The notes under the pieces were generated by a model. The model was not told the DNA's origin and did not search any database. It was given only the letters and a program-made list of their open reading frames with translations. A stretch of 64,000 bases of DNA from Malacoraja senta (taxonomy: Eukaryota): contig JAXLNO010005773.1 of the NCBI GenBank assembly GCA_038087875.1, positions 1 through 64,000 of the forward strand. The letters run 5' to 3'. The position numbers were made by a program, and so were the translations under genes. Every line of letters begins with the position of its first letter. Within the stretch, counting starts at the first letter, position 1. Below, piece by piece: positions 1 through 31,857 of this stretch.

Positions 1-362
1 CGCTAGAATTTAGAAGATTGAGGGGGGATCTTATAGAAACTTACAAAATTCTTAAGGGGTTGGACAGGCTAGATGCAGGAACATTGTTCCCGATTTTGGG
101 GAAGTCCAGAACAAGGGGTCACAGTTTAAGGATAAAGGGGAAATCTTTTAGGACTGAGATGAGAAAAACATTTTTTACACAGAGAGTGGTGAATCTCTGG
201 AATTCTCTGCCACGGAATATAGTTGAGGCCCGTTCATTGGCTATACTTAAGAGGGAGTTAGATGTGGCCCTTGTGGCTAAAGGGATCAGGGGTTATGGAG
301 AGAAGGCAGGTACAGGATACTGAGTTGGATGATCAGCCATGATCATATTGAATGGCTCGAAG
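1..362 (+). mobile_element. CR1 LINE 3' fragment (ORF2 C-terminus), lacking its terminal tail
   Basis: ORF 18..323 GDLIETYKILKGLDRLDAG...RTRGHSLRIKG...FFTQRVVNLWNSLP is the typical CR1 ORF2 C-terminus. It is nearly identical to 1137-1500 and 62337-62700. Confidence 0.9.
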
Positions 363-1546
363 ACTTTCAGAAGGCTTTCGACAAGGTACCACATAAGAGA
401 TTAGGATACAAACTTAAATCACACGGTATTGGGGGTTCAGTATTGATGTGGATAGAGAACTGGCTGGCAAACAGGAAGCAAAGAGTAGGAGTAAACGGGT
501 CCTTTTCACAATGGCAGGCAGTGACTAGTGGGGTACCGCAAGGCTCAGTGCTGGGACCCCAGCTATTTACAATTTATATTAATGATCTGACGAGGGAATT
601 GAAAGCAACATCTCCAAGTTTGCGGATGACACTAAGCTGGGGGCAGTGTTAGCTGTGAGGAGGATGCTAGGAGACTGCAAGGTGACTTGGATAGGCTGGG
701 TGAGTGGGCAAATGTTTGGCAGATGCAGTATAATGTGGATAAATGTGAGGTTATCCACTTTGGTAGCAAAACGGGAAGGCAGACTATTATCTAAATGGTG
801 GCCGATTAGGAAATGGGGAGATGCAGCGAGACCTGGGTGTCATGGTACACCAGTCATTGAAAGTAGGCATGCAGGTGCAGCAGGCAGTGAAGAAAGCGAA
901 TGGTATGTTGGCCTTCATAGCAAGAGGATTTGAGTATAGGACCAGGGAGGTTCTACTGCAGTTGTACAGGGTCTTGGTGAGACCACACCTGGAGTATTGC
1001 GTACAGTTTTGGTCTCCAAATCTGAGGAAGGACATTATAGCCATAGAGGGAGTGCAGAGAAGGTTCACCAGACTGATTCCTGGGATGTCAGGACTTTCAT
1101 ATGAAGAAAGACTGGATAGACTTGGCTTATACTCGCTAGAATTTAGGAGATTGAGAGGGGATCTTATAGAAACGTACAAAATTCTTATGGGGTTGGACAG
1201 GCTAGATGCAGGAAGATTGTTCCGATGTTGGGGAAGTCCAGGACAAGGGGTCACAGCTTAAGGATAAGGGGGAAATCCTTTAAGACCGAGATGAGGAAAA
1301 ACTTTTTCACACAGAGAGTGGTGAATCTCTGGAACTCTCTGCCACAGAGGGTAGTTGAGGCCAGTTCATTGGCTATATTTAAGAGGGAATTAGATGTGGC
1401 CCTTGTGGCTAAAGGGATCAGGGGGTATGGAGAGAAGGCAGGTACGGGATACTGAGTTGGATGATCAGCCATGATCGTATTGAATGGCGGTGCAGGCTCG
1501 AAGGGCCGATTGGCCTACTCCTGCACCTATTTTCTATGTATCTATG
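363..1546 (+). mobile_element. 5'-truncated CR1 LINE (RT domain to 3' tail), frameshifted
   Basis: [31 protein letters not shown] and RPHLEYCVQFWSP motifs are spread over ORFs 329..652, 821..1261 and 1225..1455. It ends in a TTCTATGT-type tail. Confidence 0.92.
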
Positions 1547-1707: not shown

Positions 1708-2316
1708 ATAATTAGTATACATTCGGCTAATTGTGGTGTTTCTTGAAAACACGAAAACGAGAGAATGTAAAGGATCTGCAGAACAACTAAAAGACTGCAG
1801 AAAGCAGCTTGAAAAGGAGGCTCTTCATCTATACAACATAAGTATGTTTTATTCAGCTATCATTGTTTGTAGAGTTTCTTATTGGAATGAAAACATCATC
1901 CAAGTTTTGACCCTTCCTTGTTACTCCTGGTCCCAGGGGAATGGTTGGCATTAGCTCATTACCTTCATCCTAATAAAGGGTTGTTGTTCACAGTTGTGCC
2001 TAGGTTTTTATCAGTTATAACCTTGAGTTCACAAACTGTTCTTTGTCTGGGCTAAAGTTCACAGACTCTCCTTTTCAAGGAGTGAGCAGTTTTAAGCAAA
2101 CTGACTTCAGCAAATCCTTACAAATTCCATCACCCCCCCCCCCCCCCCCACTTTGATTCATCAATCAATGCCAGAGGGAATGAATCATCTAAGTAAAGGG
2201 GCCTGTCCCACTTACGTGTCCTTGGCACGCATATTACGCGTTGAGCCACGATGGTCCGGCGAAGGTCGGGCGCGATTACATGCGTACGTACAGCCGTCTG
2301 GAGCGCGTGACGTCAT

Positions 2317-2513
2317 TTGAAGATGGACACAAAGCTGGAGTAACTCAGCGGGATCGGCAGCATCTCTGGAGAGAAGGAATAGATGACGTTTCATGTCGAG
2401 ACTCTTCTTCAGTCTGAAAAGAAGGGTCTTGACCCGAAACATCACCCATTGCTTCTCTCCAGAGATGCTGCCGGTCCCGCTGAGTTACTCCTGCATTTCG
2501 TGTCTATCTTCAA
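2317..2513. repeat. ~195-bp inverted repeat (two Penelope-type terminal sequences, centre at ~2413) inside the MITE
   Basis: TTGAAGATGGACAC...CTCTTCTTCAG-T-CTGAAAAGAAGGG...GTGTCTATCTTCAA: the arms are reverse complements with a few mismatches. The same sequence ends the Penelope copies at ~22290-22390 and 28551-28632. Confidence 0.8.
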
Positions 2514-2531
2514 TTTTCTTGGCCCCGCTCT

Positions 2532-5500
2532 TTTTTTTTTTTTTTCTTTTTTTTTCCGTAAATTTTTTTTATTAGATTTTTAAACAAATGTACAATTTAC
2601 AAGGAAGGGTAGAAAGCTCACACAATTTAAAAAACATTTACACAAAACTATCAAATTAAAATATTAACATTTTTATCTATAATATATTCAACCTCCTGCG
2701 GTGACCAGCGTTCACAGAAGGCCTCCACAGTCCCCGTGGACACCGCGTGTTCCCTCTCTAGGGACACGCGGGCACGGACGTAACCCCGGAAAAGGGGCAG
2801 GCAGCCGACCGCTGTGCGGCCATCGACCGCCCGCTGCCTGGACCCGTGAATGGCCATCTTGGCCAGGCCCAGGAGCAGACCGACAGGGAGACCCCCTCCT
2901 CCCTCCCGACCCTCCCCCCTCTGTACCGGGTGCCCATAGATTAATAGCGTTGGACTAAAATGTAGCCAAAACTTGAGGAGCAGCCCTTTCAGATACTCGA
3001 ACAGGGGCTGCAACCTCTCGCACTCTATATACACGTGGAACACGGTCTCTTCCTCACCGCAGAAATGACACGCAGGGGAAGAGTCCGTGAACCGGCTCAA
3101 GTACCTATTACAGGCCACGGCTTTGTGCAAAACTCTCCACCCCAGGTCCCCGATGTAAAGGGGGAGGACTCCCTTGTAGAGAGACCTCCACTAGGGACCG
3201 CTCCCCTCGTCAGGTGGTAACACGGACCGCCAGGGTGTGTCTGGACGGAAGACGAGGGCGAGGAAGTGGAGAGTGTGCAAGAGCAGCCTGTACAGTACAC
3301 GCCTCTCCGCGCCACGGAATGGCACACTGGGCATCTCAGAAAGGCGGCTCATGTTGCATGGGGCCGGCTCTTGGGGAGGGTCCCGGGCCATGGGCCCTAT
3401 GAACAATTCCGACTAAGCGGGGGTAAGCTCGTCCGGAATCGCTCCATGCACACGCCTCTCCTCGACACCCACCGTCACAGCCACGACACCCCCCTCCCCC
3501 TGAGGAGCAGGGCCCTGGCTGAAGTTGACCAAATTCCTGGCCTTCAGGAGTTCACGGTAAAAGCCAGGCAACTCCCGCCTAGCGCGTCGACTCATGCCCG
3601 CTACCGGGAGCCGGGAGCCTTCCTGAAGGCACCGCCCCTGACGGAAAAAGTACGTCGCCAGCACGTGCCATTTAGGAGGGTAGTCCGAGTAGACGTACCT
3701 CCGCAGGGTCCTGAGTCGGAGAGCCGCCACCTGGGTACGAATACAGACCAGCGCCTGACCACCCTCCTCCAACGGGAGACTCAGAACCCCAGCAGAGACC
3801 CAGTGGTTCCTCTCCCCCAGAAGAAGTTGACCAATCTCCTCTGTAACATGGTTATAAAATAAGAGGATGGGACCATAGTGGCCATCCGGTACCACAGCAG
3901 AGAGGCCACCAGCTGGTTTATAACTACAGCCCTTCCCCGGTAAGAGAGCACACCAAGTAAGCCTGACCAACGTCCCAGCCGGGCGACCACTTTCGCCTCC
4001 AGCTCCTGCCAGTTCGCCGGCCACCCCTCCTCAGCGGGACTCAGGTAGACCCCCAGATAGAGGAGGTGCGTGGTACTCCACGCAAAACCTGCCATCTCCT
4101 CCGGCAGGGAGCCCACCTGCCACCCACCCACCAAGAGACCAGAACACTTCCCCCAGTTGATCCTGGCGGAAGATGCAGCCGAGAAAACCTGCTGGCACTC
4201 ACGCATCCTCCGCAGGTCAACAGGGTCGGTGAACATCAGAAGGACATCATCGGCGTAGGCCGAGAGAACCACCTCCATCCCCGGCCCCGGTAAAACCAGG
4301 CCTGTCAACCTCCTCCGGAGAAGGCACAGGAAAGGCTCGACACAGATGGAATACAGCTGGCCGGACATGGGACATCCCTGACGAACCCCCCTCCCAAAGG
4401 GAATGGGGGCCAACAAAGAGCCGTTGACCTTAACAAGGCATTCTGCAGCAGTATATAACAGTCGGACCCAGGCCACAAAATGCGGTCCAAATCCGAACAC
4501 CTGCAGTGTCCCAAGAAGGTAGTCGTGCTCCACCCTGTCAAACGCCTTCTCCTGGTCGAGGGAGAGAAAGGCGACCGACTGACCAGCCCCCTGGGACAGA
4601 TGGATCAGGTCCCGGAGCAGATGGATATTGTCCTGGATGGACCGGCCCGGGACTGTGTACGACTGGTCAGGGTGGATCACCTGGGACAGCACGGGACCCA
4701 GGCGATTCGCCAATGCCCGTGCAAAGACTTTATAGTCCGTGCTGAGGAGAGAGACCGGGCGCCAGTTCTTCAAAAGGCGAAGATCGCCCTTCTTGGGCAG
4801 CAGGACAACAACTGCCCTGCGCCAAGAGAAAGGCATCTCCCCGGTCGCCAGGCTCTCCCCCAGGACCTTCATATAGTCGCCCCCCAGGACATCCCAGAAG
4901 GCTCTAAGGTACTCCACAGTCAGCCCATCCAGCCCTGGAGACTTGCCCCTCCTGAGCTGGTGCAGGGCAACAGTCAACTCCTCCAGAGTTAGGGGATCAT
5001 CCAGGTGTTCAGCCACATCATTGCACACAGCGGGTAAGCCCTCCCACAGGACTTCTTGTGCCTCCCCACTCGATGTGCCAGCCGAGAACAGAGTCCTGTA
5101 GAACGACCGAACTGAGGCACCAATGCTCTCTGGATCTGTGACAGAGGAGCCATCATCCGCAAGCAACTCTACAAGCTGCCTGCGGGCTCCTCGCCCCTTC
5201 TCCAGAGAAAAGAAAAAGGGGGAGGCGCGGTCCAGGTCGTGCAACATCTGGACCCGCGACCTCACATACGCACCCCGGGACCTCCTAAGCTGCAAGTCCC
5301 TCAGTGCTCCCTTCTTCTCCTGGTATTCCTCCCACTCACACGAAGCCCCACCAGTCTGATCCAGACGAGCCTCCGAGTCGAGCAACTCTCTCTCAAGCCG
5401 TCCGATCTCGGATTCCCGCCCCTTGGTCGACCCCCTCGCATAGTCCTGGCAAAACTGACGGTCGTAGACCTTCCCCACGTCCCACCACTGCCTTAGGGAA

Positions 5501-8500
5501 AGGAAACGCCCCTGCCTCTCTCTCCACCTCGCCCAGAACTGCCTGAATGAATCCCGGAATCGGCAATCCTCCAACAGCTGGCTATTAAAATGCCAGTACG
5601 CGGACCCTGCCCGTGTGCGCGCTGGGATAAAGTCCACTCGCACCAGGCAATGGTCCGAGCATGGCGCCGGCTGCATGGAGGCCGCCGAAACACAGGAGAC
5701 ATAGGCCTTGGACACGTATAAATGATCAATACGGGAACCACCACCCTCAAACCTGTACGAGAAGGCGTTAGAGTCGGGATGGAAATTCCGCCAAGCATCT
5801 ACCAGCTCAAAAGAGTCCACCATCTCCCTCAAAGTCTTCACTGCTCCCGGGTCACGCTGTACGCCAGAGCGATCTCTTGTCTCGAGGGCACAATTAAAAT
5901 CTCCCCCAAGGAAAACACACTCCCCACGGTCGATAGTATTCAACAACGTGGTCACTTCCCTTGTTAAGCGCGTCTGCATTGCGCCGATCTTGGGGGCGTA
6001 CACATTAACGAAGTGTAATGGCACGCCATCCAAGCGCACGGCCAGATACAGCAAACGGCCTGGTACAACCTCCTGCACTTTGAGGATCTCTGGCTGGAAA
6101 GACGGGGCCAACAGGAAGGCTACTCCACTCGATTTGGAGCTGAGATGACTCATGTAGACCCCACCTTCCCACTCCAGGAGCCAGGTGGGTTCATCACTAG
6201 CCACAGTGTGTGTTTCCTGCAGGAAGCTCACCGCATACCTCCCGTCCCTGAGCACTGAGAGATGGTGAAACCTACGGAGAGACCCCCTGCCCCCATTGAT
6301 ATTCAGGCTGGCTATAGTGAGCTACATTTTGAAAGTACACTAGATCTTTTACCCTCCCCGGTGATGGGTTGGAGCCGCCCCTACCCTTCTTCCCTCTCTT
6401 TAGGGTCTTAAAAAGCTCTTGGAACTGGCGCCTCTCATTTCTTACCAGCCCCGCCTCATTCCCCTTCTTCTGAAGGATGGCATGAATAGACTGCATGGGC
6501 TCCATCAGGTCCGACCAGCGGTCAACAGCCAAATCCACCTTATTCCTACTCCCTCTAGTTTCCTTTAAGAACTTCCGAAGTTCCCAGACTTCGACAAGTC
6601 GAGACACGGGGCCACGGGTGGAGCAGTCCGTCAACTCACTGTCAACGTACTCCGCGTACCCTTCCTCCTCGCACTCAATGTCCGAGCCCGAGTCCAGAAG
6701 GTTACTACTTTCATCCGCCTCGCTCACCCCTCCCTGTGAGGTGGGCATTCCAGCCACATCACACAGTCCCTCCTCTGTCACCATCCCACCCCCAGGATCA
6801 GTGACAGGGGCAGGTACCGGTGCCTCTGACCGCGGCAATCTATCTGACAATTTGCCAGTCTCCTGCACGCTCCCATCGCCCTCTGTAACCGGATTGGGAA
6901 AAGTGAAGTCAGAGCAAGTCTCCGGGCCTTGCTGTAAGCAGGTCTGTCTGGAGTCCGACCTAAGGACACGATCCAAAACGATCTTGCCCTCCTCCGCACC
7001 CAGGGTATCCGCCCCTGCACCGTCACCCAGAGAGTCCCCGTCCCCCACCACCAGGTGAATCCCCCCACTGTGGCCCTCAGGGGCCGATGTTACTGGAGTC
7101 TCCCCTGCTCCCTCAACCAGTGGGGCATCACACCCCTCAACTGGGCTTGTAGCCTCAACGGGGAGCTCATGCTGGGGACCCACCCCCTCACCCAAGTCCC
7201 CCCCCCTTCAGGCTGCCCCTGGTCACCCACTAAGCTAGCAGACGTGTTTTCTGGGGGAACAGCCCCCAAGAGCAATATATCTCCACTCTCAGGTGGTCCC
7301 AGACCTACAAAGGCATCCTCCCCCTCAGAGGAAACCTGCCCTGGGTACCCCACCTCAACACGAGGGGAAGGCTCCCCTTCAGGTTGCCCCTGAACTTCAG
7401 GGCCCTTCTCTGTATCGGAGGACCCATGCCTCCTCCTCTTCGAACCACTGGCGTACGGTGGTACGGTGAGCTCCCAGCAGAAGCCTCTACCTCCACACTA
7501 CCGTCTATCTCAGAGGCGAGCATGAAATTATCTGCTGCCTGTGGTCCCGCTTGGAGGTGATCATCTTCTAGGGGATCAGCCTGGAGATGTTTCTTCTTTT
7601 TCTTGACTTTCCTCCCCTGCTGATGCTCCCAAACCTTCCCATCCACCCTACGCAATTCTCCGGCATCCACCGCCACAGGTACGGGACATGGGGGTGGTGG
7701 GGGGATAGGGGTTGGGGGTAGGGGAGTAAAGCCTTCACGGGCCACCGTGATAAAACCAGCAGCCCCAGATGGGCCTGTAGTGCTTTCCCGTGCCATCGTG
7801 GTTGAACTGGCAGCCCGGGTCCTGGGACAATTCTTGCGAAAATGCCCCACCTTTTTGCAAGCGTGACAACGCACTTGGCCCGCATTCCAGAACACGCGAT
7901 AGGAGAAATCATCCACCTCCACCTCAAAACTCCCCTCCGTGTCCGTCCCCTGTGCCAACTGTATATACACGCGACGCTTGAACGTATATATATGCTGCAT
8001 CTCAGGATCGTCAAACCTGTACAACAGTTTGGTGAGCCCTGACCGCACCTCCCCCAGCTTCCTTACATGTGGGAGCAGGAGCGCATCCGGAACAAAAGTG
8101 GGAACGTTGGACAGAATGACCGGCAAAACGGGACCCCCCCATGGGTCCACCGCCGCGAAAATCCCCCCTGCTGTTACCCCCCTTTCCAGAGCCAGAGCCA
8201 CCGCCTGTTCAGTCTTTAGTATAACCACAACCTTCCCACTGACCACCGCGCCCGAGACGATGGCTTTCTTGCCAACAGTCTCACCCAACGCATCTAGAAA
8301 GGCCTTTAAGGGCAGGTTGCTCTTCATGTACATTTTTACACCATATGTGCGCCCCATCAACTCGTGGCCCTCAGTCTCGGAGACTGCCGACCGTGCAGCA
8401 GCTGCATAACTCTGAGGGGCCGCCATCTTTAGGGCGTGGCACAACACACAAAGTATCAGTAGTTTATATCCAAAGCAGTCTTTCTGCTGTTGCTGCACCT

Positions 8501-8988
8501 CCACTCTTTTCCAGCAGTTAAATAGTCTTGTGAAGGCTTTCTTGGTAAGCAACAGAAGCAGTCTCCTCCTGATAAGATAGGAATGTCCGTGCCAATCCTC
8601 CCCGTCGTCAAAAATGGAGCTTCCTTATGCTTCTTCCCCGGCTTCAACGAAATCCAAGGCACTGTTGCCGTTCTTACCCAGCCCACCTGGACCGGGCAAG
8701 TCGGTGTAGGAGGGAGCTTTCCGATGTTACTGACCACAAACACCGCTCTAGACTCAGCTCCCACTCGTTCAAGTGTAACTTGGCCTTCCGCCAGCCACTG
8801 CCGCTCCTACGACTTTACAGATACACGGACAAATCCTCCCTAATTAGAGGAATCTTTGAACAAAGAAAGTCTCTGCAGATCGACAAAGCTCTGAACTGCA
8901 AAGTCTGACTGCTTTTGTTTCTCCCCGCCAAACAAAACCTTCCGAAAAGTTCATCCAATCCTCCCCGCCAGCAGAACAGCTCCTCACC
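2532..8988 (-). mobile_element. Tx1-clade non-LTR retrotransposon, full-length copy A (defective)
   Basis: On the minus strand it has a 5' end GGTGAGGAGCTG and ORF1 from ATG 8426 with a CCHC knuckle CHACKKVGHFRKNC (frameshift ~7472). ORF2 carries APE endonuclease and RT (LQETH, GGDFNC, DQEKAFDRV, GVRQGCP, YADD) and a C-terminal CHFC..H..C ending at 2651, followed by AATAAA and poly(A). ORF2 starts ATG-TAG, has a frameshift at ~3816 and a stop at 3413-3415. It is flanked by TGGCCCCGCTCT at 2520-2531 and 8989-9000. Confidence 0.95.
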
Positions 8989-9119
8989 TGGCCCCGCTCT
9001 TTTTTTTTTTTTTTTTTTTTTTCCGTAAATGTTTTTTTATTAGATTTTTAAACAAATGTACAATTTACAAGGAAGGGTAGAAAGCTCACACAATTTTAAA
9101 AACCATTTACACATAATTA

Positions 9120-12100
9120 TCAAATTAAAATATTAACATTTTTATCTATAATATATTCAACCTCCTGCGGTGACCAGCGTTCACAGAAGGCCTCCACAGT
9201 CCCCGTGGACACCGCGTGTTCCCTCTCTAGGGACACGCGGGCACGGACGTAACCCGGAAAAGGGGCAGGCAGCCAACCGCTGTGCGGCCATCGACCGCCC
9301 GCTGCCTGGACCCGCGAATGGCCATCTTGGCCAGGCCCAGGAGCAGTCCGACAGGGAGACCCCCTCCTCCCTCCCGACCCTCCCCCCTCTTTACCGGGTG
9401 CCCATAAATTAATAGCGTTGGACTAAAATGTAACCAAAACTTGAGGAGCAGCCCTTTCAAATACTCGAACAGGGGCTGCAACCTCTCGCACTCTATATAC
9501 ACGTGGAACACGGTCTCTTCCTCACCGCAGAAATGACAAGCAGGGGAAGAGTCCGTGAACCGGCTCAAGTACCTATTACAGGCCACGGCTTTGTGCAAAA
9601 CTCTCCACCCCAGGTCCCCGATGTAAAGGGGGAGGACTCCCTTGTAGAGATACCTCCACTGGGGACCGCTCCCCTCGTCAGGTGGTAACACGGACCGCCA
9701 GGGTGTGTCTGGACGGAAGACGAGGGCGAGGAAGTGGAGAGTGTGCAAGAGCAGCCTGTACAGTACTCGCCTCTCCGCGCCACGGAATGGCACACTGGGC
9801 ATCTCAGAAAGGCGGCTCATGTTGCATGGGGCCGGCTCTCGGGGAGGGTCCCGGGCCATGGGCCCTATGAACAATTCCGACTGAGCGGGGGTAAGCTCGT
9901 CCGGAATCGCTCCATGCACACGCCTCTCCTCGATACCCACCGTCACAGCCACGACACCCCCCTCCCCCTGAGGAGCAGGGCCCTGGCTGAAGGTGACCAA
10001 ATTCCTGGCCTTCAGGACTTCACGGTAAAAGCCAGGCAACTCCCGCCTAGCGCGTCGACTCATGCCTGCTACCGGGAGCCGGGAGCCCTCCTGAAGGCAC
10101 CGCCCCTGACGGAAAAAGTACGTCGCCAGCACGTGCCATTTAGGAGGGTAGTCCGAGTAGACGTACCTCCGCAGGGTCCTGAGTCGGAGAGCCGCCACCT
10201 GGGTACGAATACAGACCAGCGCCTGACCACCCTCCTCCAACGGGAGACTCAGAACCCCAGCAGAGACCCAGTGGTTCCTCTCCCCCAGAAGAAGTTGACC
10301 AATCTCCTCTGTAACATGGTTATAAATAAGAGGATGGGACCATAGTGGCCATCCGGTACCACAGTAGAGAGGCCACCAGCTGGTTTATAACTATAGCCCT
10401 GCCCCGGTAAGAGAGCACACCAAGTAGGCCTGACCAACGTCCCAGCCGGGCGACCACTTTCGCCTCCAGCTCCTGCCAGTTCGCCGGCCACCCCTCCTCA
10501 GCGGGACTCAGGTAGACCCCCAGATAAAGGAGGTGCGTGGTACTCCACGCAAAACCTGCCATCTCCTCCGGCAGGGAGTCCACCTGCCACCCACCCATCA
10601 AGAGACCAGAACACTTCCCCCAGTTGATCCTGGCGGAAGATGCAGCCGAGAAAACCTGCTGGCACTCACGCATCCTCCGCAGGTCAACAGGGTCGGTGAA
10701 CATCAGAAGGACATCATCGGCGTAGGCCGAGAGAACCACCTCCATCCCCGGCCCCGGTAAAGCCAGGCCTGTCAACCGCCTCCGGAGAAGGCACAGGAAA
10801 GGCTCGACACATATGGAATACAGCTGGCTGGACATGGGACATCCCTGACGAACCCCCCTCCCAAAGGGAATGGGGGCCAACAAAGAGCCGTTGACCTTAA
10901 CAAGGCATTCTGCAGCAGTATATAACAGTCGGACCCAGGCCACAAAATGCGGTCCAAATCCGAACGCCTGCAGAGTCCCAAGAAGGTAGTCGTGCTCCAC
11001 CCTGTCAAACGCCTTCTCCTGGTCGAGGGAGAGAAAGGCGACCGACTGACCAGCCCCCTGGGACAGATGGATCAGGTCCCGGAGCAGATGGATATTGTCC
11101 TGGATGGACCGGCCCGGGACTGTGTACGACTGGTCAGGGTGGATCACCTGGGACAGCACGGGACCCAGGCGATTCGCCAATGCCCTTGCAAAGACTTTAT
11201 AGTCCGTGCTGAGGAGAGAGACCGGGCGCCAGTTCTTCAAAAGGCGAAGATCGCCCTTCTTGGGCAGCAGGACAACAACTGCCCTGCGCCAAGAGAAAGG
11301 CATCTCCCCGGTCGCCAGGCTCTCCCCCAGGACCTTCATATAGTCGCCCCCCAGGACATCCCAGAAGGCTCTAAGGTACTCCACAGTCAGCCCATCCAGC
11401 CCTGGAGACTTGCCCCTCCTAAGCTGGTGCAGGGCACCAGTCAACTCCTCCAGAGTTAGGGGATCATCCAGGTGTTCAGCCACATCATTGCACACTACGG
11501 GTAAGCCCTCCCACAGGACTTCTTGCGCCTCCCCACTCGATGTGCCAGCTGAGAACAGAGTCCTGTAGAAAGACCGAACCGAGGCACCAATGCTCTCTGG
11601 ATCTGTGACAGAGGAGCCATCATCCGCAAGCAACTCTACAAGCTGCCTGCGGGCTCCTCGCCCCTTCTCCAGAGAAAAGAAAAAGGGGGAGGCGCGGTCC
11701 AGGTCGTGCAACATCTGGACCCGCGACCTCACATACGCACCCCGGGACCTCCTAAGCTGCAAGTCCCTCAGTGCTCCCTTCTTCTCCTGGTATTCCTCCC
11801 ACTCACACGAAGCCCCACCAGTCTGATCCAGATGAGCCTCCGAGTCGAGCAACTCTCTCTCAAGCCGTCCGATCTCGGATTCCCGCCCCTTGGTCGACCC
11901 CCTCGCATAGTCCTGGCAAAACTGACGGACGTAGACTTTCCCCACGTCCCACCACTGCCTTAGGGAAAGGAAACGCCCCTGCCTCTCTCTCCACCTCACC
12001 CAGAACTGCCTGAATGAATCCCGGAATCGGCAATCCTCCAACAGCTGGCTATTTAAATGCCAGTACGCGGACCCTGCCCGTGTGCGCGCTGGGATAAAGT

Positions 12101-12794
12101 CCACTCGCACCAGGCAATGGTCCGAGCATGGCGCCGGCTGCATGGAGGCTGCCGAAACACAAGAGACATAGGCCTTGGACACGTATAAATGATCAATACG
12201 GGACCCACCACCCTCAAACCTGTACGAGAAGGCGTTAGAGTCAGGATCGAAATTCCGCCAAGCATCTACCAGCTCAAAAGAGTCCACCATCTCCCTCAAA
12301 GTCTTCACTGCTCCCGGGTCACGCTGAACGCCAGAGCGATCTCTTGTCTCAAGGGCACAATTAAAATCTCCCCCAAGGAAAACACACTCCCCACGGTCGA
12401 TAGTATTCAACAACGTGGTCACTTCCCCTGTTAAGCGCGTCTGCATTGCGCCGATCTTGGGGGCGTACACATTAACGAAGTGTAATGGCACACCATCCAA
12501 GCGCACGGCCAGATACAGCAAACGGCCTGGTACAACCTCCTGCACTTTGAGGATCTCCGGCTGGAAAGACGGGGCCAACAGGAAGGCTACTCCACTCGAT
12601 TTGGAGCTGAGATGACTCATATAGACCCCCCCTTCCCACTCCAGGAGCCATGTGGGTTCATCACTAGCCACAGTGTGTGTTTCCTGCAGGAAGCTCACCG
12701 CATATCTCCCGTCTCTGAGCACTGAGAGATGGTGAAACCTACGGAGAGACCCCCTGCCCCCATTGATATTAAGGCTGGCTATAGTGAGCTTCAT
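9120..12794 (-). pseudogene. Tx1 ORF2 (APE endonuclease-RT-CCHC), frameshifted
   Basis: It starts MKLTIASLNINGG and gives an 824-aa open frame covering EN and RT. The C-terminal part continues in other frames (HWVSAGVLSLPLEEGGQ, CHFCGEEETVFHVYIEC). Confidence 0.9.
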
Positions 12795-14893
12795 TTTGAA
12801 AGTACACTTGATCTTTTACCCGACCCCGGTGATGGATTGGAGCCGCCCCTACCCTTCTTCCCTCTCTTTAGGGCCTTAAAAAGCTCTTGGAACTGGCGCC
12901 TCTCATTTCTTACTAGCCCCGCCTCATTCCCCTTCTTCTGAAGGATGGCATGAATGGACTGCATGGGCGCCATCAGGTCCGACCAGCGGTCGACAGCCAA
13001 CTCCACCTTGTTCCTACTCCCTCTAGTGTCCTTTAAGAACTTCCGAAGTTCCCAGACTTCGACAAGTTGAGACACGGGGCCGCGGGTGGAGCAGTCCGTC
13101 AACTCATTGTCGATGGACTCCGGGTACCCCTCCTCCTCACACTCAATGTCCGAGCCCGAGTCCAGATGGTTACTACTCTCAGCCGCCTCGCTCACCCCTC
13201 CCTGTGAGGTGGGCATTCCAGCCACATCACACAGTCCCTCCTCTGTCACCATCCCACCCCCAGGATCAGTGACAGGGGCAGGTACCGGTGCCTCTGACCG
13301 CGGCAAGCTTTCTGACAGTTGGCCAGTCTCCTGCACGCTCCCATCGCCCTCTGTAACCAGATTGGGAACAGTGAACTCAGAGCAAGTCTCCGGGCCTTGC
13401 TGTAAGCGGGTCTGTCTGGAGTCCGACCTAAGGACACGATCCAAAACGATCTTGCCCTCCTCCGCACCCACGGTATCCGCCCCTGCACCGTCACCCAGAG
13501 AGTCCCCGTCCCCCACCACCAGGTGAATCACCCCACTGTGTCCCTCAGGGGCCGATGTTACTGGAGTCTCCCCTGCTCCCTCAACCAGTGGGGCATTACA
13601 CCCCTCAACTGGGCTTGTAGCCTCAACGGGGAGCTCATGTTGGGGACCCACCCCCTCACCCAATTCCCCCCCTTCAGGCTGCCCCTGGTCATCCACTAAG
13701 CTAGCAGACATGTTTTCTGGGGGAACAGCCCCCAAGAGCAATATATCGCCACTCTCAGGTGGCCCCAGACCTACAGAGGCATCCTCCCCCTCAGAGGAAA
13801 CTTGCCCTGGGTACCCCACCTCAACAGGAGGGGAAGGCTCCCCTTCAGGTTGCCCCTGAACTTCAGGGCCCTTCTCTGTATCGGACGACCCATGCCTCCT
13901 CCTCTTCGAACCACTGGCGTACGGTGGTACGGTGAGCTCCATTGCAGAAGCCTCTACCTGCACATTACCTTCTATCTCAGAGGCGAGCATGAAATTATCT
14001 GCTTCCTGGGGTCCCGCTTGGAGGTGATCATCTTCTAGGGGATCAGCCTGGAGATGTTTCTTCTTTTTCTTGACTTTCCTCCCCTGCTGATGCTCCCAAA
14101 CCTTCCCATCCACCCTACGCACTTCTCCGGCATCCACCGCCACAGGTACGGGACATGGGGGTGGTGGGGGGATAGGGGTTGGGGGTAGGGGAGTAAAGCC
14201 TTCACGGGCCACCGTGGTAAAACCAGCAGCCCCAGATGGGCCAGTAGTGCTTTCCCGTGCCATCGTGGTGGAACTGGCAGCCCGGGTCCTGGGACAATTC
14301 TTGCGAAAATGCCCCACCTGTTTGCAACCGTGACAACGCACTTGGCCCGCATTCCAGAACACGCGATAGGAGAAATCATCCACCTCCACCTCAAAACTCC
14401 CCTCCGTGTCCGTCCCCTGTGCCAACTGTATATACACGCGACGCTTGAACGTATATATATGCTGCATCTCAGGATCGTCAAACCTGTACAACAGTTTGGT
14501 GAGCCCTGACCGCACCTCCCCCAGCTTCCTTACATGTGGGAGCAGGAGCGCATCCGGAACAAAAGTGGGAACGTTGGACAGAATGACCGGCAAAATGGGA
14601 CCCCCCCATGGGTCCACCGCCGCGAAAATCCCCCCTGCTGTTACCCCCCTTTCCAGAGCCAGAGCCACCGCCTGTTCAGTCTTTAGTATAACCACAACCT
14701 TCCCACTGACCACCGCGCCCGAGACGATGGCTTTCTTGCCAACAGTCTCACCCAACGCATCTAGAAAGGCCTTTAAGGGCAGGTTGCTCTTCATGTACAT
14801 TTTTACACCATATGTGCGCCCCATCAACTCGTGGCCCTCAGTCTCGGAGACTGCCGACCGTGCAGCAGCTGCATAACTCTGAGGGGCCGCCAT
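12791..14893 (-). CDS. Tx1 ORF1p (700 aa from the Kozak-context ATG MAAPQ), gag-like CCHC zinc knuckle and long acidic/Pro-rich C-terminal half
   Basis: Open frame 12791..15019 in the track. The context is AAGATGGCG at 14893, and the protein contains CHGCKQVGHFRKNC. Confidence 0.85.
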   Translation of the reverse strand: MAAPQSYAAAARSAVSETEGHELMGRTYGVKMYMKSNLPLKAFLDALGETVGKKAIVSGAVVSGKVVVILKTEQAVALALERGVTAGGIFAAVDPWGGPILPVILSNVPTFVPDALLLPHVRKLGEVRSGLTKLLYRFDDPEMQHIYTFKRRVYIQLAQGTDTEGSFEVEVDDFSYRVFWNAGQVRCHGCKQVGHFRKNCPRTRAASSTTMARESTTGPSGAAGFTTVAREGFTPLPPTPIPPPPPCPVPVAVDAGEVRRVDGKVWEHQQGRKVKKKKKHLQADPLEDDHLQAGPQEADNFMLASEIEGNVQVEASAMELTVPPYASGSKRRRHGSSDTEKGPEVQGQPEGEPSPPVEVGYPGQVSSEGEDASVGLGPPESGDILLLGAVPPENMSASLVDDQGQPEGGELGEGVGPQHELPVEATSPVEGCNAPLVEGAGETPVTSAPEGHSGVIHLVVGDGDSLGDGAGADTVGAEEGKIVLDRVLRSDSRQTRLQQGPETCSEFTVPNLVTEGDGSVQETGQLSESLPRSEAPVPAPVTDPGGGMVTEEGLCDVAGMPTSQGGVSEAAESSNHLDSGSDIECEEEGYPESIDNELTDCSTRGPVSQLVEVWELRKFLKDTRGSRNKVELAVDRWSDLMAPMQSIHAILQKKGNEAGLVRNERRQFQELFKALKRGKKGRGGSNPSPGSGKRSSVLSK

Positions 14894-16189
14894 CTTTAGG
14901 GCGTGGCACAACACACAAAGTATCAGTAGTTTATATCCAAAGCAGTCTTTCTGCTGTTGCTGCACCTCCACTCTTTTCCAGCAGTTAAATAGTCTTGTGA
15001 AGGCTTTCTTGGTAAGCAACAGAAGCAGTCTCCTCCTGATAAGATAGGAATGTCCGTGCCAATCCTCCCCGTCGTCAAAAATGGAGCTTCCTTATGCTTC
15101 TTCCCCGGCTTCAACGAAATCCAAGGCACTGTTGCCGTTCTTACCCAGCCCACCTGGACCGGGCAAGTCGGTGTAGGAGGGAGCTTTCCGATGTTACTGA
15201 CCACAAACACCGCTCTAGACTCAGCTCCCACTCGTTCAAGTGTAACTTGGCCTTCCGCCAGCCACTGCCGCTCCTACGACTTTACAGATACACGGACAAA
15301 TCCTCCCTAATTAGAGGAATCTTTGAACAAAGAAAGTCTCTGCAGATCGACAAAGCTCTGAACTGCAAAGTCTGACTGCTTTTGTTTCTCCCCGCCAAAC
15401 AAAACCTTCCGAAAAGTTCATCCAATCCTCCCCGCCAGCAGAACAGCTCCTCACCTGGCCCCGCTCTGGGAGTAGAAGTGGGGGCGGATCTGGACCGCAA
15501 CGGCCGTGAGCCCCAGGCCGAGTTCGGCGATCGTTTGCCTGCTTCTGCTCCTGTTGAAAGTGAGACTTTGCGTCGCGCCAGGGTCTTGGGCCTGTCCCAC
15601 TTTGGCCGTCAGTTCCGCGACAGGCCGTTGGCGCGCGAAGATTTCGTTCACTACAAAATTATTGGAGCCCCGCGCGATGTCGCGCACAACTACATACCCC
15701 TCCGCGCTTCTCAGTGAGACCGGTCCCGCGCGGCCATACGATGCCCGTGAGCCTCAACGCGACCACGAGGTCGCATAATTTGTGTGCCAAGGACACGTAA
15801 GTGGGACAGGCCCTTAAAAATACCAAGGAAGGGTAGCGCAGCTACACATCACTGGATATCTTTAACCTGTTTAATCACTGGATATCTTTAACCTGTTCAA
15901 TGCCACCGCCGAGTACACTAAGGATCATGGCCAATAGTGAAAAATAAACTTGGCAGTGAACAGCTTAATGGTCTCCATATTTTAGAGAAAGCCTTCAATG
16001 CCCATGAGGGGTGAGCCTTATTATATCTATGTTTCTCTAAATATAGGAAGCACTTTTGTGGTAATAGATGGGGCAGCTCGGGCCTCGAAAAGATCCAACC
16101 TTATGTGCAGCTTTACATTTGTTTATATGCAATAAGCAAAAAGAAGACAATAGAAGATAAAACATGATAATAATTATAAGCAAAGCCAA

Positions 16190-21519: not shown

Positions 21520-22430
21520 TTAAGGATATAGAAGGGAATATGTGCTTGGAGTTTGTGGATATAGGCGAGGTTTGGTTTCACCAAGGAAGACATGGAGAAT
21601 AGTAAGGACTATTAATAGTACGTACATCATAAAATCCTCCATCATTTTTGCCACCTCCAACGGGATCCCACTACTGATCACATCTTCCCATCTCCACCCC
21701 TTTCTGCTTTCCGCAGAGACCGTTCCCTCCGAAACTCCCTGGTCAACTTGTCCCTTCACACCCAAACCACCCGCTCCCCGGCTACTTTCCCCTGCAACCG
21801 CCGGAGATGCAACACCTGTCCCTTTACGTCCCCCCTCGACTCCGTCCAAGGACCAAAAGTCTTTCCAGGTGAGGCAGAAGTTCACTTGCACCTCTTCCAA
21901 CCTCATCTACTGTATCCACTGTTTCAGTTGTCAACTTCTCTACATCAGTGAGACCAAGCGCAGGCTCGGCGATCGTTTTGCTGAACACTTCCCCTCAGTC
22001 CGTCTTACCCTACCCGATCTCCCGGTGGCTCAGCACTTCAACTCCCCCTCCCATTCCCAATCTGACCTTTCTGTTCTGGGCCTCCTCCATTGTCAGAGTG
22101 TGGCCCAGCACAAATTGGAGGAACAGCACCTCATATTTCGCTTGGGTAGTCTATACTCCAGCGGTATGAACATTGACTTCTATAACTTTCGATAGCCCTT
22201 GATTTCTCTCTCCATCCCCTCCCCCTTCCCAATTCTCCCACCAGTCTTACTGTCTCCGCCGACATTCTATCTTTGTCCCTCCCCTGACATCAGTATGAAG
22301 AAGGGTCTCGACCCAAAACGATGCCCATTCCATCTCTCCAGGGAAGCTGCCTGACCCGCTGAGTTACGCCAGCATTTTGTGTCTCTCTTCGATTTTAACA
22401 TCTGCAGCATCTGCAGTTCTTTCTTACACA
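21520..22430 (+). mobile_element. Penelope-like element 3' fragment (GIY-YIG endonuclease and terminal repeat)
   Basis: PCNRRRCNTC / FTCTSSNLIYCIHCFSCQLLYISETKRRLGDRFAEH..PVAQHFN..EQHLIFRLGSL..GMN, followed by TGAAGAAGGGTCTCGACCC... Confidence 0.9.
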
Positions 22431-24104: not shown

Positions 24105-25490
24105 TTTTAAAATTTATTTTAAATATTTTTATTAGAAGCATGTGCATATCATAATACAAACATTTCTTATATATCAATCCTACTTTGCTAATAGGTGGGA
24201 GTCCAGCTATCAAAATAATAGTGGTCCTCCTTTATCAATTGTATATTAAATCAGCTTCTATTTAGTTTTGTTTTATAGATAGAAAGTGAGAAATTTAAAA
24301 GCATGATAAAGAAGAATGGAATAATTTACCAATAATACAACTTTGGAGATAGGTCCGTAGGTTATAAAGCATAACTATTCATCTAATCCTGAGCTTGGAT
24401 TTCAGTCAGATTCCCGTGCTGAACCAATTTACCCTTTCAAAAAATCAATACATGGAGACCATATTCCATTAAATAATTCATGTTTGTCAATTAAGACAAG
24501 TCTAGTTCTTTCCAAATGTAAGGTCTCTGACATTTCCATAATCCACATTTTAATTGTGGGGTTTATAGGACCTTTCCAAAATTTTAATATTAATTTTTTC
24601 CCAATTATTATACTATAATCAAGAAAGCTTCTTTGGTTTATTGTAAGTCTTAGGCTTTGTTCTGATATTCCTAATATTATTAGTTTTGAGTCGGGATCCA
24701 ATTGGGTATTGACTACTTCAGAAATTATTCTGAAAATGTCCTTCCAGAAATTTTTGATTTTTATACAATTTACAAAGGTTAGCCTCTAAATGCTGGCATT
24801 TATCACAAATAGGAGAGATATGTGGGAAGATTCTATTTAATTTTGTTTAAGAATAATGTAATCTATGTAATACTTTAAATTGTATTAAGGCATGTCTGGC
24901 ATTTAACGAGCATTGATGTATATATTGTAGACTTTCGTCCCAAATATCTTTCGTTAAGGGTTGGCCTAATTCATTTTCCCATGTGTGTCTATATAAATCC
25001 GTTGGCAGGACCTCACTATCTAAGAGGGTATTATAAATATGAGATATTAATTTTTCTGTATTAGGATGTTTATTCAAACATTCATCAACGATTTCTGGTT
25101 CCCTAGTTCTGTAATCTTGTGTATTTGATTTAATGTAATCTCTAAGTTGTAAATATCTGAAAAAGTTATTTGAGTGTAGTCCGTAAATCTGTTGTAACTC
25201 CTGAAATGAAAGAAAAGTGCCTTTCCTATAAAGATGACCCTTCTTTTTAATTCCATAATTTTTCCATTGTGTAAAGCCTTTATCCAACATGGAAGGTTTG
25301 AATAAAGGGTTGTTTATAATGGGGAGACAGAGTGATAAATTATCCAATTTTAAAGTCTTTTTTAATTGTTTCCAAATTCGTATACCACTATATATTATAT
25401 GATTTTCACTATAGGTTTTTTAATGCAATTTTGTGGGAGCAAACATAATCGAACCAATTTCAAAAGCAAACAGTCTTTCACTATTTTGTA
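24105..25490 (-). mobile_element. L1-clade LINE 3' fragment (ORF2 C-terminal part), carrying the duplication start point at 24913
   Basis: NLSLCLPIINNPLFKPSMLDKG..FFRYLQLRD..ALIQFKVLHRLHYS is homologous to the L1 ORF2 at 58800-59400. Only the 24913-25490 part recurs, at 36253-36830. Confidence 0.88.
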
Positions 25491-26040
25491 TGATTCAATG
25501 AGGTCCCCCCTTATGCTTCTAAACTCCAGCAAGTACAGGCCCACTGACATCAAATGGTCATCATATGTTAACCCATTCATTCCTGGGATCATTCTTGTAC
25601 TCCTCTGGACCCTCTCCAGAGCCAGCACATCCTTCCTCAGATATGGTGCCCAAAATTGCTCACAATGCTCCAAATGTGGCTTGACTGGTGCCTTATAGAA
25701 CCTCAGCATTACATCCCTGTTTGACAGGGAGAAAATGCAATTGATGTCTTTCATATTAGTTAACCATGGATTTTCTTGACCACAGTTGACAGCCCCTAAT
25801 GGGATTGCATGTCTATCACACATCTCAAAAGAGCACAGCGTTAAGCTTCGAAGGGCAAAATTTACACGAGATGTGCAGGTCAAGTGTTTTTTTGCACAGA
25901 GAGAGCTTGATACCTAGAATGCGCTACCAGGAGTGGTGGTAGAGGAGGAAATGATAATGGTGCTTAAGAAAGTTTTGGACAGGCTCGTGGGTATGCAGGG
26001 AATACAAGAATATGGATCACATGCAGGCAGTGGAGATTAG
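25490..26040. mobile_element. Degenerate CR1 fragments in both orientations (duplicated at ~36830-37380)
   Basis: Minus strand gives VKPHLEHCEQFWAPYLRKD..GDLIESYKI; the plus strand carries a CR1 3'-end-like stretch at ~25830-26040. Confidence 0.7.
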
Positions 26041-26330
26041 TTTTGGTTTAGTTTAGAGAAACAGGAACCTTGGGCCACTGAGTCCACACTGACCAGCAAT
26101 TGCCCATTCACTATTTCTGTCCTACAAGCTAGGGACAATTTACAGAAGCCAATTAACCTGCATGTCTTTTGTATTTGGGAGGAAACCGGAGCCCCCAGAG
26201 AAAACCCACAGGGTGACAGAGAGAACGTACAAACTCCGTCCAGACAGCATTCTAGTCAGGATCAAACCCGGGTCTCTAATGCTGTAAGACAGCCACTCTA
26301 TCACTGTGCCTCTGTGTTGCCTTAGTTTAA
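26040..26330 (-). repeat. HE1/V-SINE-like SINE (copy at 37380-37670). Further members at ~23490-23760(-), 28645-28870(-), 29215-29340(+), 30295-30580(-), 35155-35485(-), their duplicates, and 46905-47200(-), 47340-47600(+), 48080-48310(+), 63812-64000(+)
   Basis: Shared core (reverse complement) GGAGTTTGTACGTTCTC...GGTTTCCTCCC..., TGTAAATTGTCCCTAG and a CTAAA-repeat tail. Boundaries are approximate. Confidence 0.75.
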
Positions 26331-28184
26331 CTTGGTATCCTGTTCCACATGGACATTGCAGGCTGAAAGTCCTGTTCTTGTACTGTTCTATGTTCTATAT
26401 ATTCTCATTGGACAGGGCAGGGATATGTTTTCCACTCCTCCAGCCTCCATGTTGAATACTTCATCCCAGTTTAAATCTGATTCAATTAGTCAATCCATTT
26501 CTCCCTCCGCTCCTGCCCTGCTCCCCATTCTATATTTTGAAGTAGTCATTCCCTTTTTCGCTCCCTGGTCTGTCTACTATCCCCACAACTTTCCTCTGCT
26601 TTCCTGTCTTGGTGCAAGCAACATCCATCCATTTACCACTTTCCATAGACCCAGGCAGTTCTTCAAAGTGAAACAGCGTGAAACACAAGCACTTCCAGTC
26701 AAATCTACTGCATTTAGTTTTCATTACGTAATCTTCCACAACGCATCAATGAAACAAATAGAATGGCTGCTTTCTGGAGAACCCGCATTCAATCCATGGG
26801 ACTTTCTAAGATTCCTAATTCCTGCCACTCTAATTCTCCATTCAACACCCACCATGATCCATCCATCTGTACCTCTTACACTAGGATAACAAGGGTGAAA
26901 GTAGCCTTGAGGACCAACAACTCAGCTTCTGTCTGGACATGTTGCAGCCTTTCAAACTCAATTCCACATTCAACGAGTTGCATTCCCTGTCGATAAAAGA
27001 ACTGGTCATTTCAACTGTTAAGTTGAAGACAGAAAGACAAGATGCAAGAAGTATGAAGCAGGATCCCAAGCTGAAACATTACGTAACCATGTCTTCCAGA
27101 TGCTGCCTGAACCACTGAGTTACACCTGCACGTTTTTGTGTTTTTTTTAATTACAGTTAAGTTATCCACCTGCCAAATCAGGACAGCCTGACCTACTTGA
27201 GTACTGCAGTATGTCTGCATTTTATATAACTCTGTTTAATTTCATGCATGCAGAGATGCAGTGAAATGGTTCGGATGGAACAGCAGATGCTGGACACCCC
27301 GTCCCTTCTCTCCAGAGATGCTGCCTGTCCCGCTGAGTTACTCCAGCTTTTTGTGTCTATCTGCAGTGAAATGGTTGTTCTGCATTCTCTCCAGTCAAGT
27401 CATACTGTACATAAGTACAATTCGTCCTCTTCTGGAAAAGCACGCAGAGATCCACCACATTTCAGGACTATCTTGCAGCTTCCAAGTCTCTGAAAAGTCT
27501 GATTTTGCCCCAAGGAAATACCCAATTTCTCATATTCTCATGTTAAGGCCCAGTGTCATAACAGCACTGGATTGATGAAGTAGAGGCGCCTGCCTCAGTT
27601 TAAGATTTTCTGTTTCAAGATGTGATCGAACCCTCGTCACTGGAATTGTGTCGCAGTGCCACCCATTACGTATCAGTCCCAATTATCTTTCAACATGCTG
27701 GAATCACTTGTTTTTTAATCCTTTTAGACTTTTTTTATGAATTGTTCAGCATAAACAGTTATGCTACAACAGTTAAGCCCAGCTACCACTTAGTTCCAGA
27801 GCCGGAACAACACAAGAGATAGTGTTGCAGGGCTCTCGCTTAACTTTTTTCCCCTGTTGCCAGCCGGGCAACCTCGGCAGCTTTTTAGGTTGCCAAATGA
27901 CAGCTTAGGTGGTCATTTAAGATGGCTTGCATGACGCGTGCGATAATGTGCTCGGATGAAGTGCGTAGATACCAGTCAGAATTATGGTCAATGAAACATT
28001 CACATATTATTTCTGCTTCAAATAAAGTCACAAACTAAACATATTCACCAATGAAGACATGATATATACCACAATGACATGCATCAAAATTACAATACAG
28101 TATCTCATCTATGTTTACACGTTGCAATGAATGCAATTTATATTATCTCTTTCCACTTCCAAACAAAAATATGGTTATTCAGCG

Positions 28185-31680: not shown

Positions 31681-31857
31681 TAACAGGGAGCGTACAATCC
31701 CTTTTAAACCACGTGGTTGGTTGATGGTGACGAAAGAGGCAAAATGGGGCAGATGTAGACAGTAACTTGGTGGTTGTAGTAGACTGAAGAATATTTTGTG
31801 TTGGGTGACTGTGCAAGTTTTACTGAAGATGAAAATAACCATCTTACTGTCTTGTAG

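What the first reader, a model, noticed from the sequence alone, without database searches (positions are those of the whole stretch)
2197..15814. Site-specific Tx1 retrotransposon stacked twice at one 12-bp site inside a DNA MITE (retroelement that targets another transposon)
Seen: TGGCCCCGCTCT occurs three times (2520-2531, 8989-9000, 15456-15467), before, between and after two full-length ~6.46-kb Tx1 copies that start at exactly the same nucleotide. Removing them rebuilds a ~680-bp element with ~43-bp TIRs and a TAA TSD. Known: Tx1-clade elements use an APE endonuclease and are often sequence-specific, and Xenopus Tx1L/Tx2L insert at fixed sites in the DNA elements Tx1D/Tx2D. Inference: this is an elasmobranch Tx1 family whose target is a multicopy Harbinger-like MITE, with the TSD regenerating a target so that insertions stack. 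It would be an independent parasite-of-a-parasite system. I do not know whether this target has been described.
Basis: partly seen in the sequence, partly recalled or inferred. Interest (0 to 1): 0.82.

Follow-up and report, generated by a model that had tools for sequence, protein, structure and literature searches.

The report
Site-specific Tx1 LINE inside Harbinger MITE
A young retrotransposon closely related to the frog element Tx1 inserts almost only at one 12-base site inside an old, abundant DNA-transposon relic, and here it has done so twice at the same copy; the case is real and clean, but it is a new example of a known behaviour.

Summary
TGGCCCCGCTCT occurs three times. It brackets two full-length LINE copies on the minus strand (6,457 and 6,455 nt, 97.9% identical). 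These sit inside a 682-bp MITE with 42-nt TIRs and TAA duplications.

ORF2 (APE endonuclease, RT, zinc finger) is 52% identical over its full length to Xenopus Tx1L ORF2, and scores far below that against human L1.

Across the 1.94-Gb genome:
- All 128 exact full-length 5' ends lie at this target. Of the 100 listed, 87 follow the MITE flank and 13 follow the poly(A) of another copy.
- At least 153 of about 259 3' ends are on target. The off-target copies I could inspect are all 5'-truncated.
- About 2,476 empty sites exist.

The LINE copies differ by about 1.4%, while their host MITE arms differ by about 15%. These are therefore recent independent insertions into old MITEs. The two stacked copies belong to different sublineages, so the stack is not a local duplication or an assembly error.

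The kind is already known. Tx1L inserts in Tx1D. Tx1-Mar inserts in Mariner. Alligator Tx1-9_AMi inserts about 300 bp into Harbinger elements, and tandem insertions around a TSD have been described (Kojima 2015). Verdict: a new member of a known kind. Another first-stage note (s1-140600) records the same family elsewhere in this genome.

The parts
2194..2196 (.). TAA target-site duplication of the host MITE (left)
   Evidence: In 14 of 20 unique empty copies the 3-bp flanks are identical TAA, TTA or GTA.
2197..2531 (+). Left arm of the host Harbinger-type MITE. It ends with target copy 1 (2520-2531) and contains the TIR 2199-2240.
2331..2497 (.). Palindromic module inside the MITE (79-nt arms, 86% complementary). 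It also occurs alone about 14 times in the window.
   Evidence: (I1).
2520..2531 (-). Target/TSD copy (AGAGCGGGGCCA on the element's sense strand), downstream of LINE copy 1.
2532..8988 (-). Tx1-type LINE copy 1, full length, 6,457 nt. Its poly(A) is 2532-2555 with one interruption. ORF1 is broken by indels. ORF2 is open across APE and RT (3781-6255) and then changes frame.
8989..9000 (-). Middle target/TSD copy, between the poly(A) of copy 2 and the 5' end of copy 1.
9001..15455 (-). Tx1-type LINE copy 2, full length, 6,455 nt. Its poly(A) is 9001-9022 and pure. ORF1 is open (12791-15019). ORF2 covering APE and RT is open (10320-12794). The C-terminal zinc-finger part (9227-10240) is in another frame.
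15456..15814 (+). Right arm of the host MITE. It starts with target copy 3 (15456-15467) and contains the TIR 15772-15813.
   Evidence: Contigs from four runs break exactly at 15456 and at 15815/15817.
15815..15817 (.). TAA target-site duplication of the host MITE (right)

Best explanation
A young family of Tx1-clade non-LTR retrotransposons (about 260 copies, about half full length) integrates by target-primed reverse transcription at one fixed site in a roughly 690-bp Harbinger-type MITE. Inferred mechanism: the ORF2 APE endonuclease nicks the bottom strand at 5'-...TGGCCCCGCTCT^GGGAG-3' (sense strand CTCCC^AGAGCGGGGCCA). The freed 3' end primes cDNA synthesis on the poly(A) tail. The top strand is then cut 12 bp away (12-17 bp in truncated copies), which duplicates AGAGCGGGGCCA. 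Each insertion therefore leaves a target copy on both sides, and a later, independent insertion can land beside the first. That is what happened in this window: two copies from different sublineages sit at one MITE copy. Shown here: the anatomy, the site specificity, the TSDs, the independence of the stacked copies, and the age gap between the LINE and the MITE. Inferred only: the nick positions, that specificity lies in the endonuclease, and which regenerated target copy is reused.
For: ORF2 carries Exo_endo_phos, RVT_1 and zf-RVT. It is 52% identical over 100% of its length to Xenopus YTX2_XENLA (933 bits), against 264 bits to human L1 ORF2p. The 5'-end 17-mer with a purine at -18 gives 128 genomic matches. 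All 100 listed are preceded by ACTCCC+AGAGCGGGGCCA or by poly(A)+AGAGCGGGGCCA. With a pyrimidine at -18 there are 0 matches. There are 259 3' ends, 138 poly(A)+target+MITE junctions and 15 poly(A)+target+5'-end stack junctions. The empty-site 24-mer occurs 2,476 times. Truncated on-target copies have TSDs of 12-17 bp that all begin at the same base. One off-target copy has a 13-bp TSD, and another sits at cTCCCAGAGt. LINE copies differ by 1.39% on average, while copy 1 and copy 2 differ by 1.84%. Thirty-eight other copies score closer to copy 1 than its stack-mate does, and copy 2's nearest relative is on another contig. MITE arms beside LINE copies differ by a median of 15%. The endonuclease beta-hairpin loop differs from that of Tx1L, and this loop is known to affect target choice (PMC1950540).
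Against: No biochemistry was done, so the nick sites are deduced from junctions alone. Roughly a quarter of the 29 youngest 3' ends inspected are not at the target, so specificity is not absolute for truncated copies. Both window copies carry a frame change before the C-terminal part of ORF2, so neither can be called functional. No RNA run was found. The observed stacks (about 15-20) are about three times what a simple random-reuse estimate gives, and this is unexplained.
Confidence: 0.9

Rival explanations
1. The MITE plus its LINE cargo spread as one composite unit, by Harbinger transposase or by segmental duplication. The constant flanks would then reflect common descent, not site-specific retrotransposition.
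For: Composite Tx1 elements were first discussed in this way for Xenopus (Garrett et al. 1989, cited in PMC1950540). A few loci are true duplicates: L012/L013, L018/L019 and L045/L046.
Against: MITE arms next to LINE copies differ by a median of 15% from each other, as empty copies do (10.8%), while the LINE copies differ by 1.4%. Two MITE sub-variants of the flank (AGAAAATTGAAG and AGACGATTGGAG) are both occupied. Truncated copies with their own TSDs lie at the same site.
Confidence: 0.02
2. The two-copy stack arose from one insertion by local tandem duplication, unequal crossing-over or an assembly error, not from a second retrotransposition.
For: The 12-bp repeats could in principle mediate slippage. 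This contig is one of 6,182 contigs in the assembly.
Against: The copies differ at 125 positions and 10 indel positions. They are further apart (1.84%) than the family mean (1.39%). Each has closer relatives elsewhere in the genome. Their poly(A) tails differ. The same junction is present at 14 other loci, including a triple stack on C7.
Confidence: 0.04
3. The 12-mer is part of the LINE transcript (a terminal repeat of the element) rather than duplicated host DNA. Its presence at both ends would then say nothing about target choice.
For: Full-length copies always show exactly 12 bp. This would also fit read-through transcripts that carry upstream target sequence, as proposed for R2-like elements (discussion in PMC4494074).
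Against: Empty MITEs contain one copy of the 12-mer at exactly this position. The sequence beyond the 12-mer is MITE on both sides. Truncated copies have duplications that extend 2-5 bp further into the MITE.
Confidence: 0.03

Closest known systems
Xenopus laevis Tx1L in Tx1D (Garrett et al. 1989; Christensen et al. 2000; as summarised in PMC1950540 and PMC4494074)
   Same: ORF2 is 52% identical over its full length. Both are APE-type LINEs that insert at one fixed site within a multicopy non-autonomous DNA transposon, with a target duplication and with empty copies present.
   Different: The host element there is a piggyBac-type transposon, not a Harbinger type (PMC4494074). The target sequence differs. 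The EN domain is only 33-53% identical, and its beta-hairpin loop is 4 residues shorter here. From my own recollection, not checked here, the Tx1L duplication is 23 bp, against 12 bp in this case.
Tx1-9_AMi of Alligator mississippiensis (Kojima 2015, PMC4494074)
   Same: A Tx1 family preferentially inserted about 300 bp from the end of Harbinger DNA transposons. Here the site is 324-335 bp from one end and about 350 bp from the other.
   Different: The host lineage is different. Whether the two Harbinger targets or the two Tx1 lineages are homologous could not be tested, because the supplement is not held and there is no Repbase access.
Crocodilian Tx1-Mar / SINEU-3 in Mariner-N4_AMi (PMC4494074)
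   Same: These target a fixed site in an old abundant DNA transposon. Tandem insertions that sandwich a TSD are interpreted there as sequential insertions.
   Different: The target is a Mariner element and the lineage is Keno-related. A SINE partner exists there, whereas the junction counts here leave no room for an abundant poly(A) partner at this site.

Membership tests
Tx1 clade of APE-type non-LTR retrotransposons | ORF2 with an N-terminal APE endonuclease, a central RT and a C-terminal zinc-finger region | tested here: met
   PF03372 at E 2.6e-14, PF00078 at E 1.3e-40, and PF13966 at 27.4 bits against a cutoff of 27.5.
Tx1 clade of APE-type non-LTR retrotransposons | RT/ORF2 groups with Tx1L rather than with L1 or other clades | tested here: met
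   933 bits and 52% identity to YTX2_XENLA, against 264 bits to human L1 ORF2p and 89 bits or less to R2. No formal phylogeny with clade references was built.
Tx1 clade of APE-type non-LTR retrotransposons | A separate ORF1 upstream of ORF2, with CCHC knuckles expected in this group | tested here: inconclusive
   ORF1 is open for 742-766 codons in copy 2. The zf-CCHC hit (18.5 bits) is below the Pfam cutoff and appears only in the copy 1 fragment. ORF1 matches turtle and sturgeon elements at 30-37%.
Sequence-specific LINE that targets a DNA transposon (Tx1L/Tx1D type) | Most copies lie at one position and orientation in one repeat family, and unoccupied copies exist | tested here: met
   128 of 128 full-length 5' ends, at least 153 of 259 3' ends, and 2,476 empty sites. 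Kojima's criterion is more than 20% of flanks (PMC4494074).
Sequence-specific LINE that targets a DNA transposon (Tx1L/Tx1D type) | The encoded endonuclease cleaves the target sequence specifically | not testable with these tools
   This needs a nicking assay. Only junction anatomy is available.
PIF/Harbinger superfamily (non-autonomous MITE) | 3-bp TWA target-site duplication | tested here: met
   14 of 20 unique copies have identical 3-bp flanks (TAA, TTA, and one GTA). The rest differ by one base. The window copy has TAA on both sides.
PIF/Harbinger superfamily (non-autonomous MITE) | Terminal inverted repeats shared with an autonomous element that encodes a DDE_Tnp_4 transposase and a Myb-like protein | not tested
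   The TIRs are confirmed (42 nt; 20,491 TIR matches genome-wide). No autonomous partner was sought because genome fetches were exhausted.

The most novel reading that the evidence does not exclude
The pairing of this Tx1 lineage with a Harbinger target about 300 bp from the transposon end may be ancient and shared with alligator Tx1-9_AMi. That would mean a LINE and a DNA transposon have been tracked together across jawed vertebrates. Separately, stacks may grow in one direction only, because only one of the two regenerated target copies keeps the full endonuclease recognition site. That would map the recognition footprint from genome data alone.
Probability: 0.12. Interest if true: 0.65.

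Novelty: new member of a known kind. Interest (0 to 1): 0.45.

Why it matters
This is an unusually clean natural example of APE-endonuclease sequence specificity. The family is young (about 1.4% divergence) and about half its copies are full length. There is a defined 12-bp duplication, about 2,500 empty targets to serve as controls, and a few informative off-target events. That makes it a practical system for working out how Tx1-type endonucleases read DNA, including the role of the divergent beta-hairpin loop. It is also relevant to targeted integration into harmless multicopy sites. It extends the 'LINE that lives inside a DNA transposon' strategy to another vertebrate genome, and it suggests the strategy is widespread in the Tx1 clade.

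Tried and rejected
- **Full tabulation of flanks.** The tabulation therefore rests on pattern rows and 60 loci of 3 kb.
- **Pattern length.** I used 35-place patterns instead.
- **Targets in other species.**
  - The Caretta locus L061 shows one Tx1-like element with poly(A) but no flanking TIRs and no similar target.
  - The horn-shark hit gave no DNA.
  - The sturgeon locus L062 holds nested and inverted copies. Its only similarity to the MITE is a 13-nt match inside a repeated GC-rich segment, which I judged to be chance.
- **Order of the two insertions.** Counts of private substitutions suggested copy 2 is older. That sample had been chosen by similarity to copy 1. The reciprocal search showed copy 2 has nearer relatives than copy 1 does. 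The order, and which target copy is reused, remain unresolved. In 3-4 of 5 mixed stacks the copy-2-like sublineage is upstream, which is not significant.
- **Expression.** No RNA run holds the stretch. The single read-laying run used contigs only and gives no expression evidence.
- **Literature.** The Christensen 2000 and Garrett 1989 papers and the Kojima 2015 supplement are not held. The Tx1L target sequence and the alligator Harbinger target could therefore not be compared.
- **SINE partner.** The junction counts (138 + 15, against 259 LINE 3' ends) leave no excess for an abundant poly(A) partner at this site.
Full report
**1. Observation**

The 12-mer TGGCCCCGCTCT occurs exactly three times in the window, at 2520, 8989 and 15456. 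Chance expectation is 0.01.

The DNA between the 12-mers forms two units, 2532-8988 and 9001-15455. They align end to end at 97.9% identity, with 125 mismatches and 10 indel positions.

Both units lie on the minus strand. Each begins, in sense orientation, with GGTGAGGAGCTGTTCTG directly after the 12-mer. Each ends in a poly(A) tail that abuts the next 12-mer.

The outer sequences, 2197-2531 and 15468-15814, join into a 682-bp element. It has 42-nt terminal inverted repeats that are 93% complementary and is flanked by TAA on both sides.

**2. The inserted element**

Copy 2 has an open ORF1 (742 aa from the first start codon). Its ORF2 is open for 824 aa and carries Exo_endo_phos (E 2.6e-14) and RVT_1 (E 1.3e-40). 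A C-terminal zf-RVT segment follows in another frame.

Copy 1 has further indels in ORF1. Both copies change frame near sense position 5130, before the zinc-finger part. I report this only as a description.

The second-best database hit of ORF2 is the Xenopus laevis Tx1 149-kDa protein itself (52% identity, 100% coverage, 933 bits). A sturgeon protein (57%) and sea-turtle proteins (52%) rank alongside it. Human L1 ORF2p scores 264 bits and R2 proteins score 89 bits or less.

The element is therefore a close relative of Tx1L within the Tx1 group. I did not build a formal clade phylogeny.

Identity to Tx1L is 67-68% across the RT but only 33-53% across the endonuclease. The beta-hairpin loop, which in Tx1L carries RDGH, is four residues shorter here. 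That loop is known to influence target choice in APE-type endonucleases (PMC1950540).

**3. The host element**

- The contiguous empty-site 24-mer TTCTTGGCCCCGCTCTGGGAGTAG occurs 2,476 times in the 1.94-Gb genome at up to 2 mismatches. The reversed control gives none.
- Twenty-two of the 30 fetched loci align to positions 3-682 of the rebuilt element at 81-92% identity.
- Their ends read A-GGGCCTGTCCC...GGGACAGGCCC-T. In 14 of 20 unique copies the 3-bp flanks are identical TAA, TTA or GTA, and in the rest they differ by one base. A 3-bp TWA duplication is the signature of PIF/Harbinger elements (established knowledge).
- The TIR 20-mer occurs 20,491 times, and elements of about 270-695 bp are visible among the listed pairs. 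The target-bearing 690-bp form is thus one member of a much larger MITE population.
- The internal 79-nt-arm palindrome is present in the family. It also occurs alone about 14 times in this window.
- I did not look for an autonomous partner.

**4. Site specificity**

*5' ends.* The 17-nt 5' end of the LINE, preceded by a purine at -18, matches 128 places. All 100 listed rows read either ACTCCCAGAGCGGGGCCA (MITE flank plus target, 87 rows) or AAAAAAAGAGCGGGGCCA (poly(A) of another copy plus target, 13 rows), with occasional single-base variants. The same pattern with a pyrimidine at -18 matches nothing. Every detectable full-length copy is therefore at this site and in this orientation.

*3' ends.* A 25-mer near the 3' end matches 259 places, so about half of the copies are full length. 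The poly(A)+target+MITE junction matches 138 places. The poly(A)+target+5'-end junction matches 15 places, including the window's own. Together these give at least 153 of 259.

*Flanks read in full.* Among the 29 youngest 3' ends whose flanks I could read, about 20 are at the target. Two more (L045 and L046, near-duplicate loci) are a stack whose downstream flank is rearranged.

*Off-target copies.* The off-target copies (L035, L036, L038, L048, L054, L055) are all truncated to under 900 nt. L038 has a clean 13-bp TSD at an unrelated site. L048 sits at cTCCCAGAGt, which resembles the target around the inferred nick.

*TSD geometry.* On-target truncated copies have duplications of 12-17 bp. These always start at the same base and extend variably into the downstream flank. 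This pattern points to a precise first (bottom-strand) nick at CTCT^GGGAG and a less precise second nick.

**5. Independent insertions, not a composite and not a duplication**

- Over the 3' 1.8 kb, 20 copies differ by 1.39% on average. The two window copies differ by 1.84%.
- With copy 1 as query, 38 other genomic copies score higher than its stack-mate.
- With copy 2 as query, the nearest copy lies on contig C796 and copy 1 ranks 34th.
- The MITE arms next to LINE copies differ by a median of 15%, much as empty copies do (10.8%).

The LINE family is thus a recent burst into old, already diverged MITE copies, and the stack consists of two separate events. Stacks recur elsewhere, including a triple stack on C7.

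A rough random-reuse estimate is n^2/2N, with about 175 insertions and about 2,650 sites. It predicts about 6 re-hits, or about 12 if both regenerated copies are usable. About 15-20 are seen. This modest excess is unexplained.

**6. Order of insertion**

Counts of private substitutions suggested copy 2 is older. That sample had been selected by similarity to copy 1, and the reciprocal searches reverse the impression. Copy 2 also has the purer tail and the more open frames.

In several mixed stacks the copy-2-like sublineage is the upstream member: the window, C796, C7 and C1 at 373.0 Mb. The C8 stack appears to be the reverse. I leave open which regenerated target copy is reused.

**7. Other genomes**

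Contigs from four coded organisms break exactly at 15456 and continue with the other MITE arm, which is the empty form. They also break at 15815/15817. MITE depth exceeds LINE depth by 50- to 1,000-fold. LINE-like contigs are present in three of the organisms. No RNA run was found.

Attempts to read the targets of turtle, sturgeon and horn-shark relatives gave nothing usable.

**8. Comparison with what is known**

- Tx1L inserts at a fixed site in Tx1D, a non-autonomous piggyBac-type element.
- Many Tx1-clade families are target specific.
- Crocodilian Tx1-Mar families target Mariner-N4_AMi.
- Tx1-9_AMi is preferentially inserted about 300 bp from the 5' end of three Harbinger families.
- Tandem insertions that sandwich a TSD are interpreted as sequential insertions.

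All five points are from PMC4494074. Tx1L endonuclease is itself sequence specific and recognises about 10 bp around the bottom-strand cut (PMC1950540, PMC1919474).

The present system matches this pattern point for point. I found no paper that describes it in cartilaginous fishes, but Repbase and Dfam could not be consulted.

**9. Verdict**

It is a new member of a known kind. Its value is as a very clean, young and probably recently active model of APE-endonuclease site specificity.

Another first-stage note (s1-140600) reports the same arrangement elsewhere in this genome. Two further notes (s1-140482, s1-141495) report other Tx1 stacks at other fixed sites. I did not test those two.

Noticed in passing
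window 24913-35642 and 36253-46982: A 10.7-kb segment is duplicated at 99.7% identity with a period of about 11.34 kb. A further 623-bp piece (35639-36260) repeats at 47461-48083. This may be a recent tandem segmental duplication or an assembly repeat.
   Followed up: no
window 2331-2497, plus about 14 solo copies (e.g. 22290-22396, 27304-27365, 34094-34185): A palindromic module of about 100-200 nt (GCTGGAGTAACTCAGCGGG...CCCGCTGAGTTACTCCAGC) is part of the MITE. It is also scattered on its own through the window, so it is a separate and very abundant hairpin repeat.
   Followed up: partly
L048 (G000:C16 near 3,899,000): An off-target, 5'-truncated copy is inserted at ...tttCTCCCAGAGtagaaat... 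with a TSD that begins at AGAG. The site shares the 9 bases around the inferred nick with the true target, which hints at the core recognition sequence.
   Followed up: partly
L035 and L055: Truncated young copies lie about 100-180 nt upstream of an older, 84-86% related 3' fragment of the same region. This suggests an older sister family, or a different repeated target.
   Followed up: no
window 362-1546 and 61558-62746: A 1.2-kb repeat occurs at both ends of the window at 93% identity. I did not identify it.
   Followed up: no
L062 (sturgeon contig, 19 kb): Three or more copies of a Tx1-like element (54-57% aa identity to the window's ORF2) are packed head-to-head and in tandem within 17 kb. 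A 339-nt duplicated 3' end is also present. Clustering may therefore also occur in that lineage.
   Followed up: no
G000:C7:46861931-46880816: Three full-length copies are stacked at one MITE site. The upstream copy is of the copy-2-like sublineage. The two downstream copies are of the copy-1-like sublineage and differ by 0.44%.
   Followed up: partly
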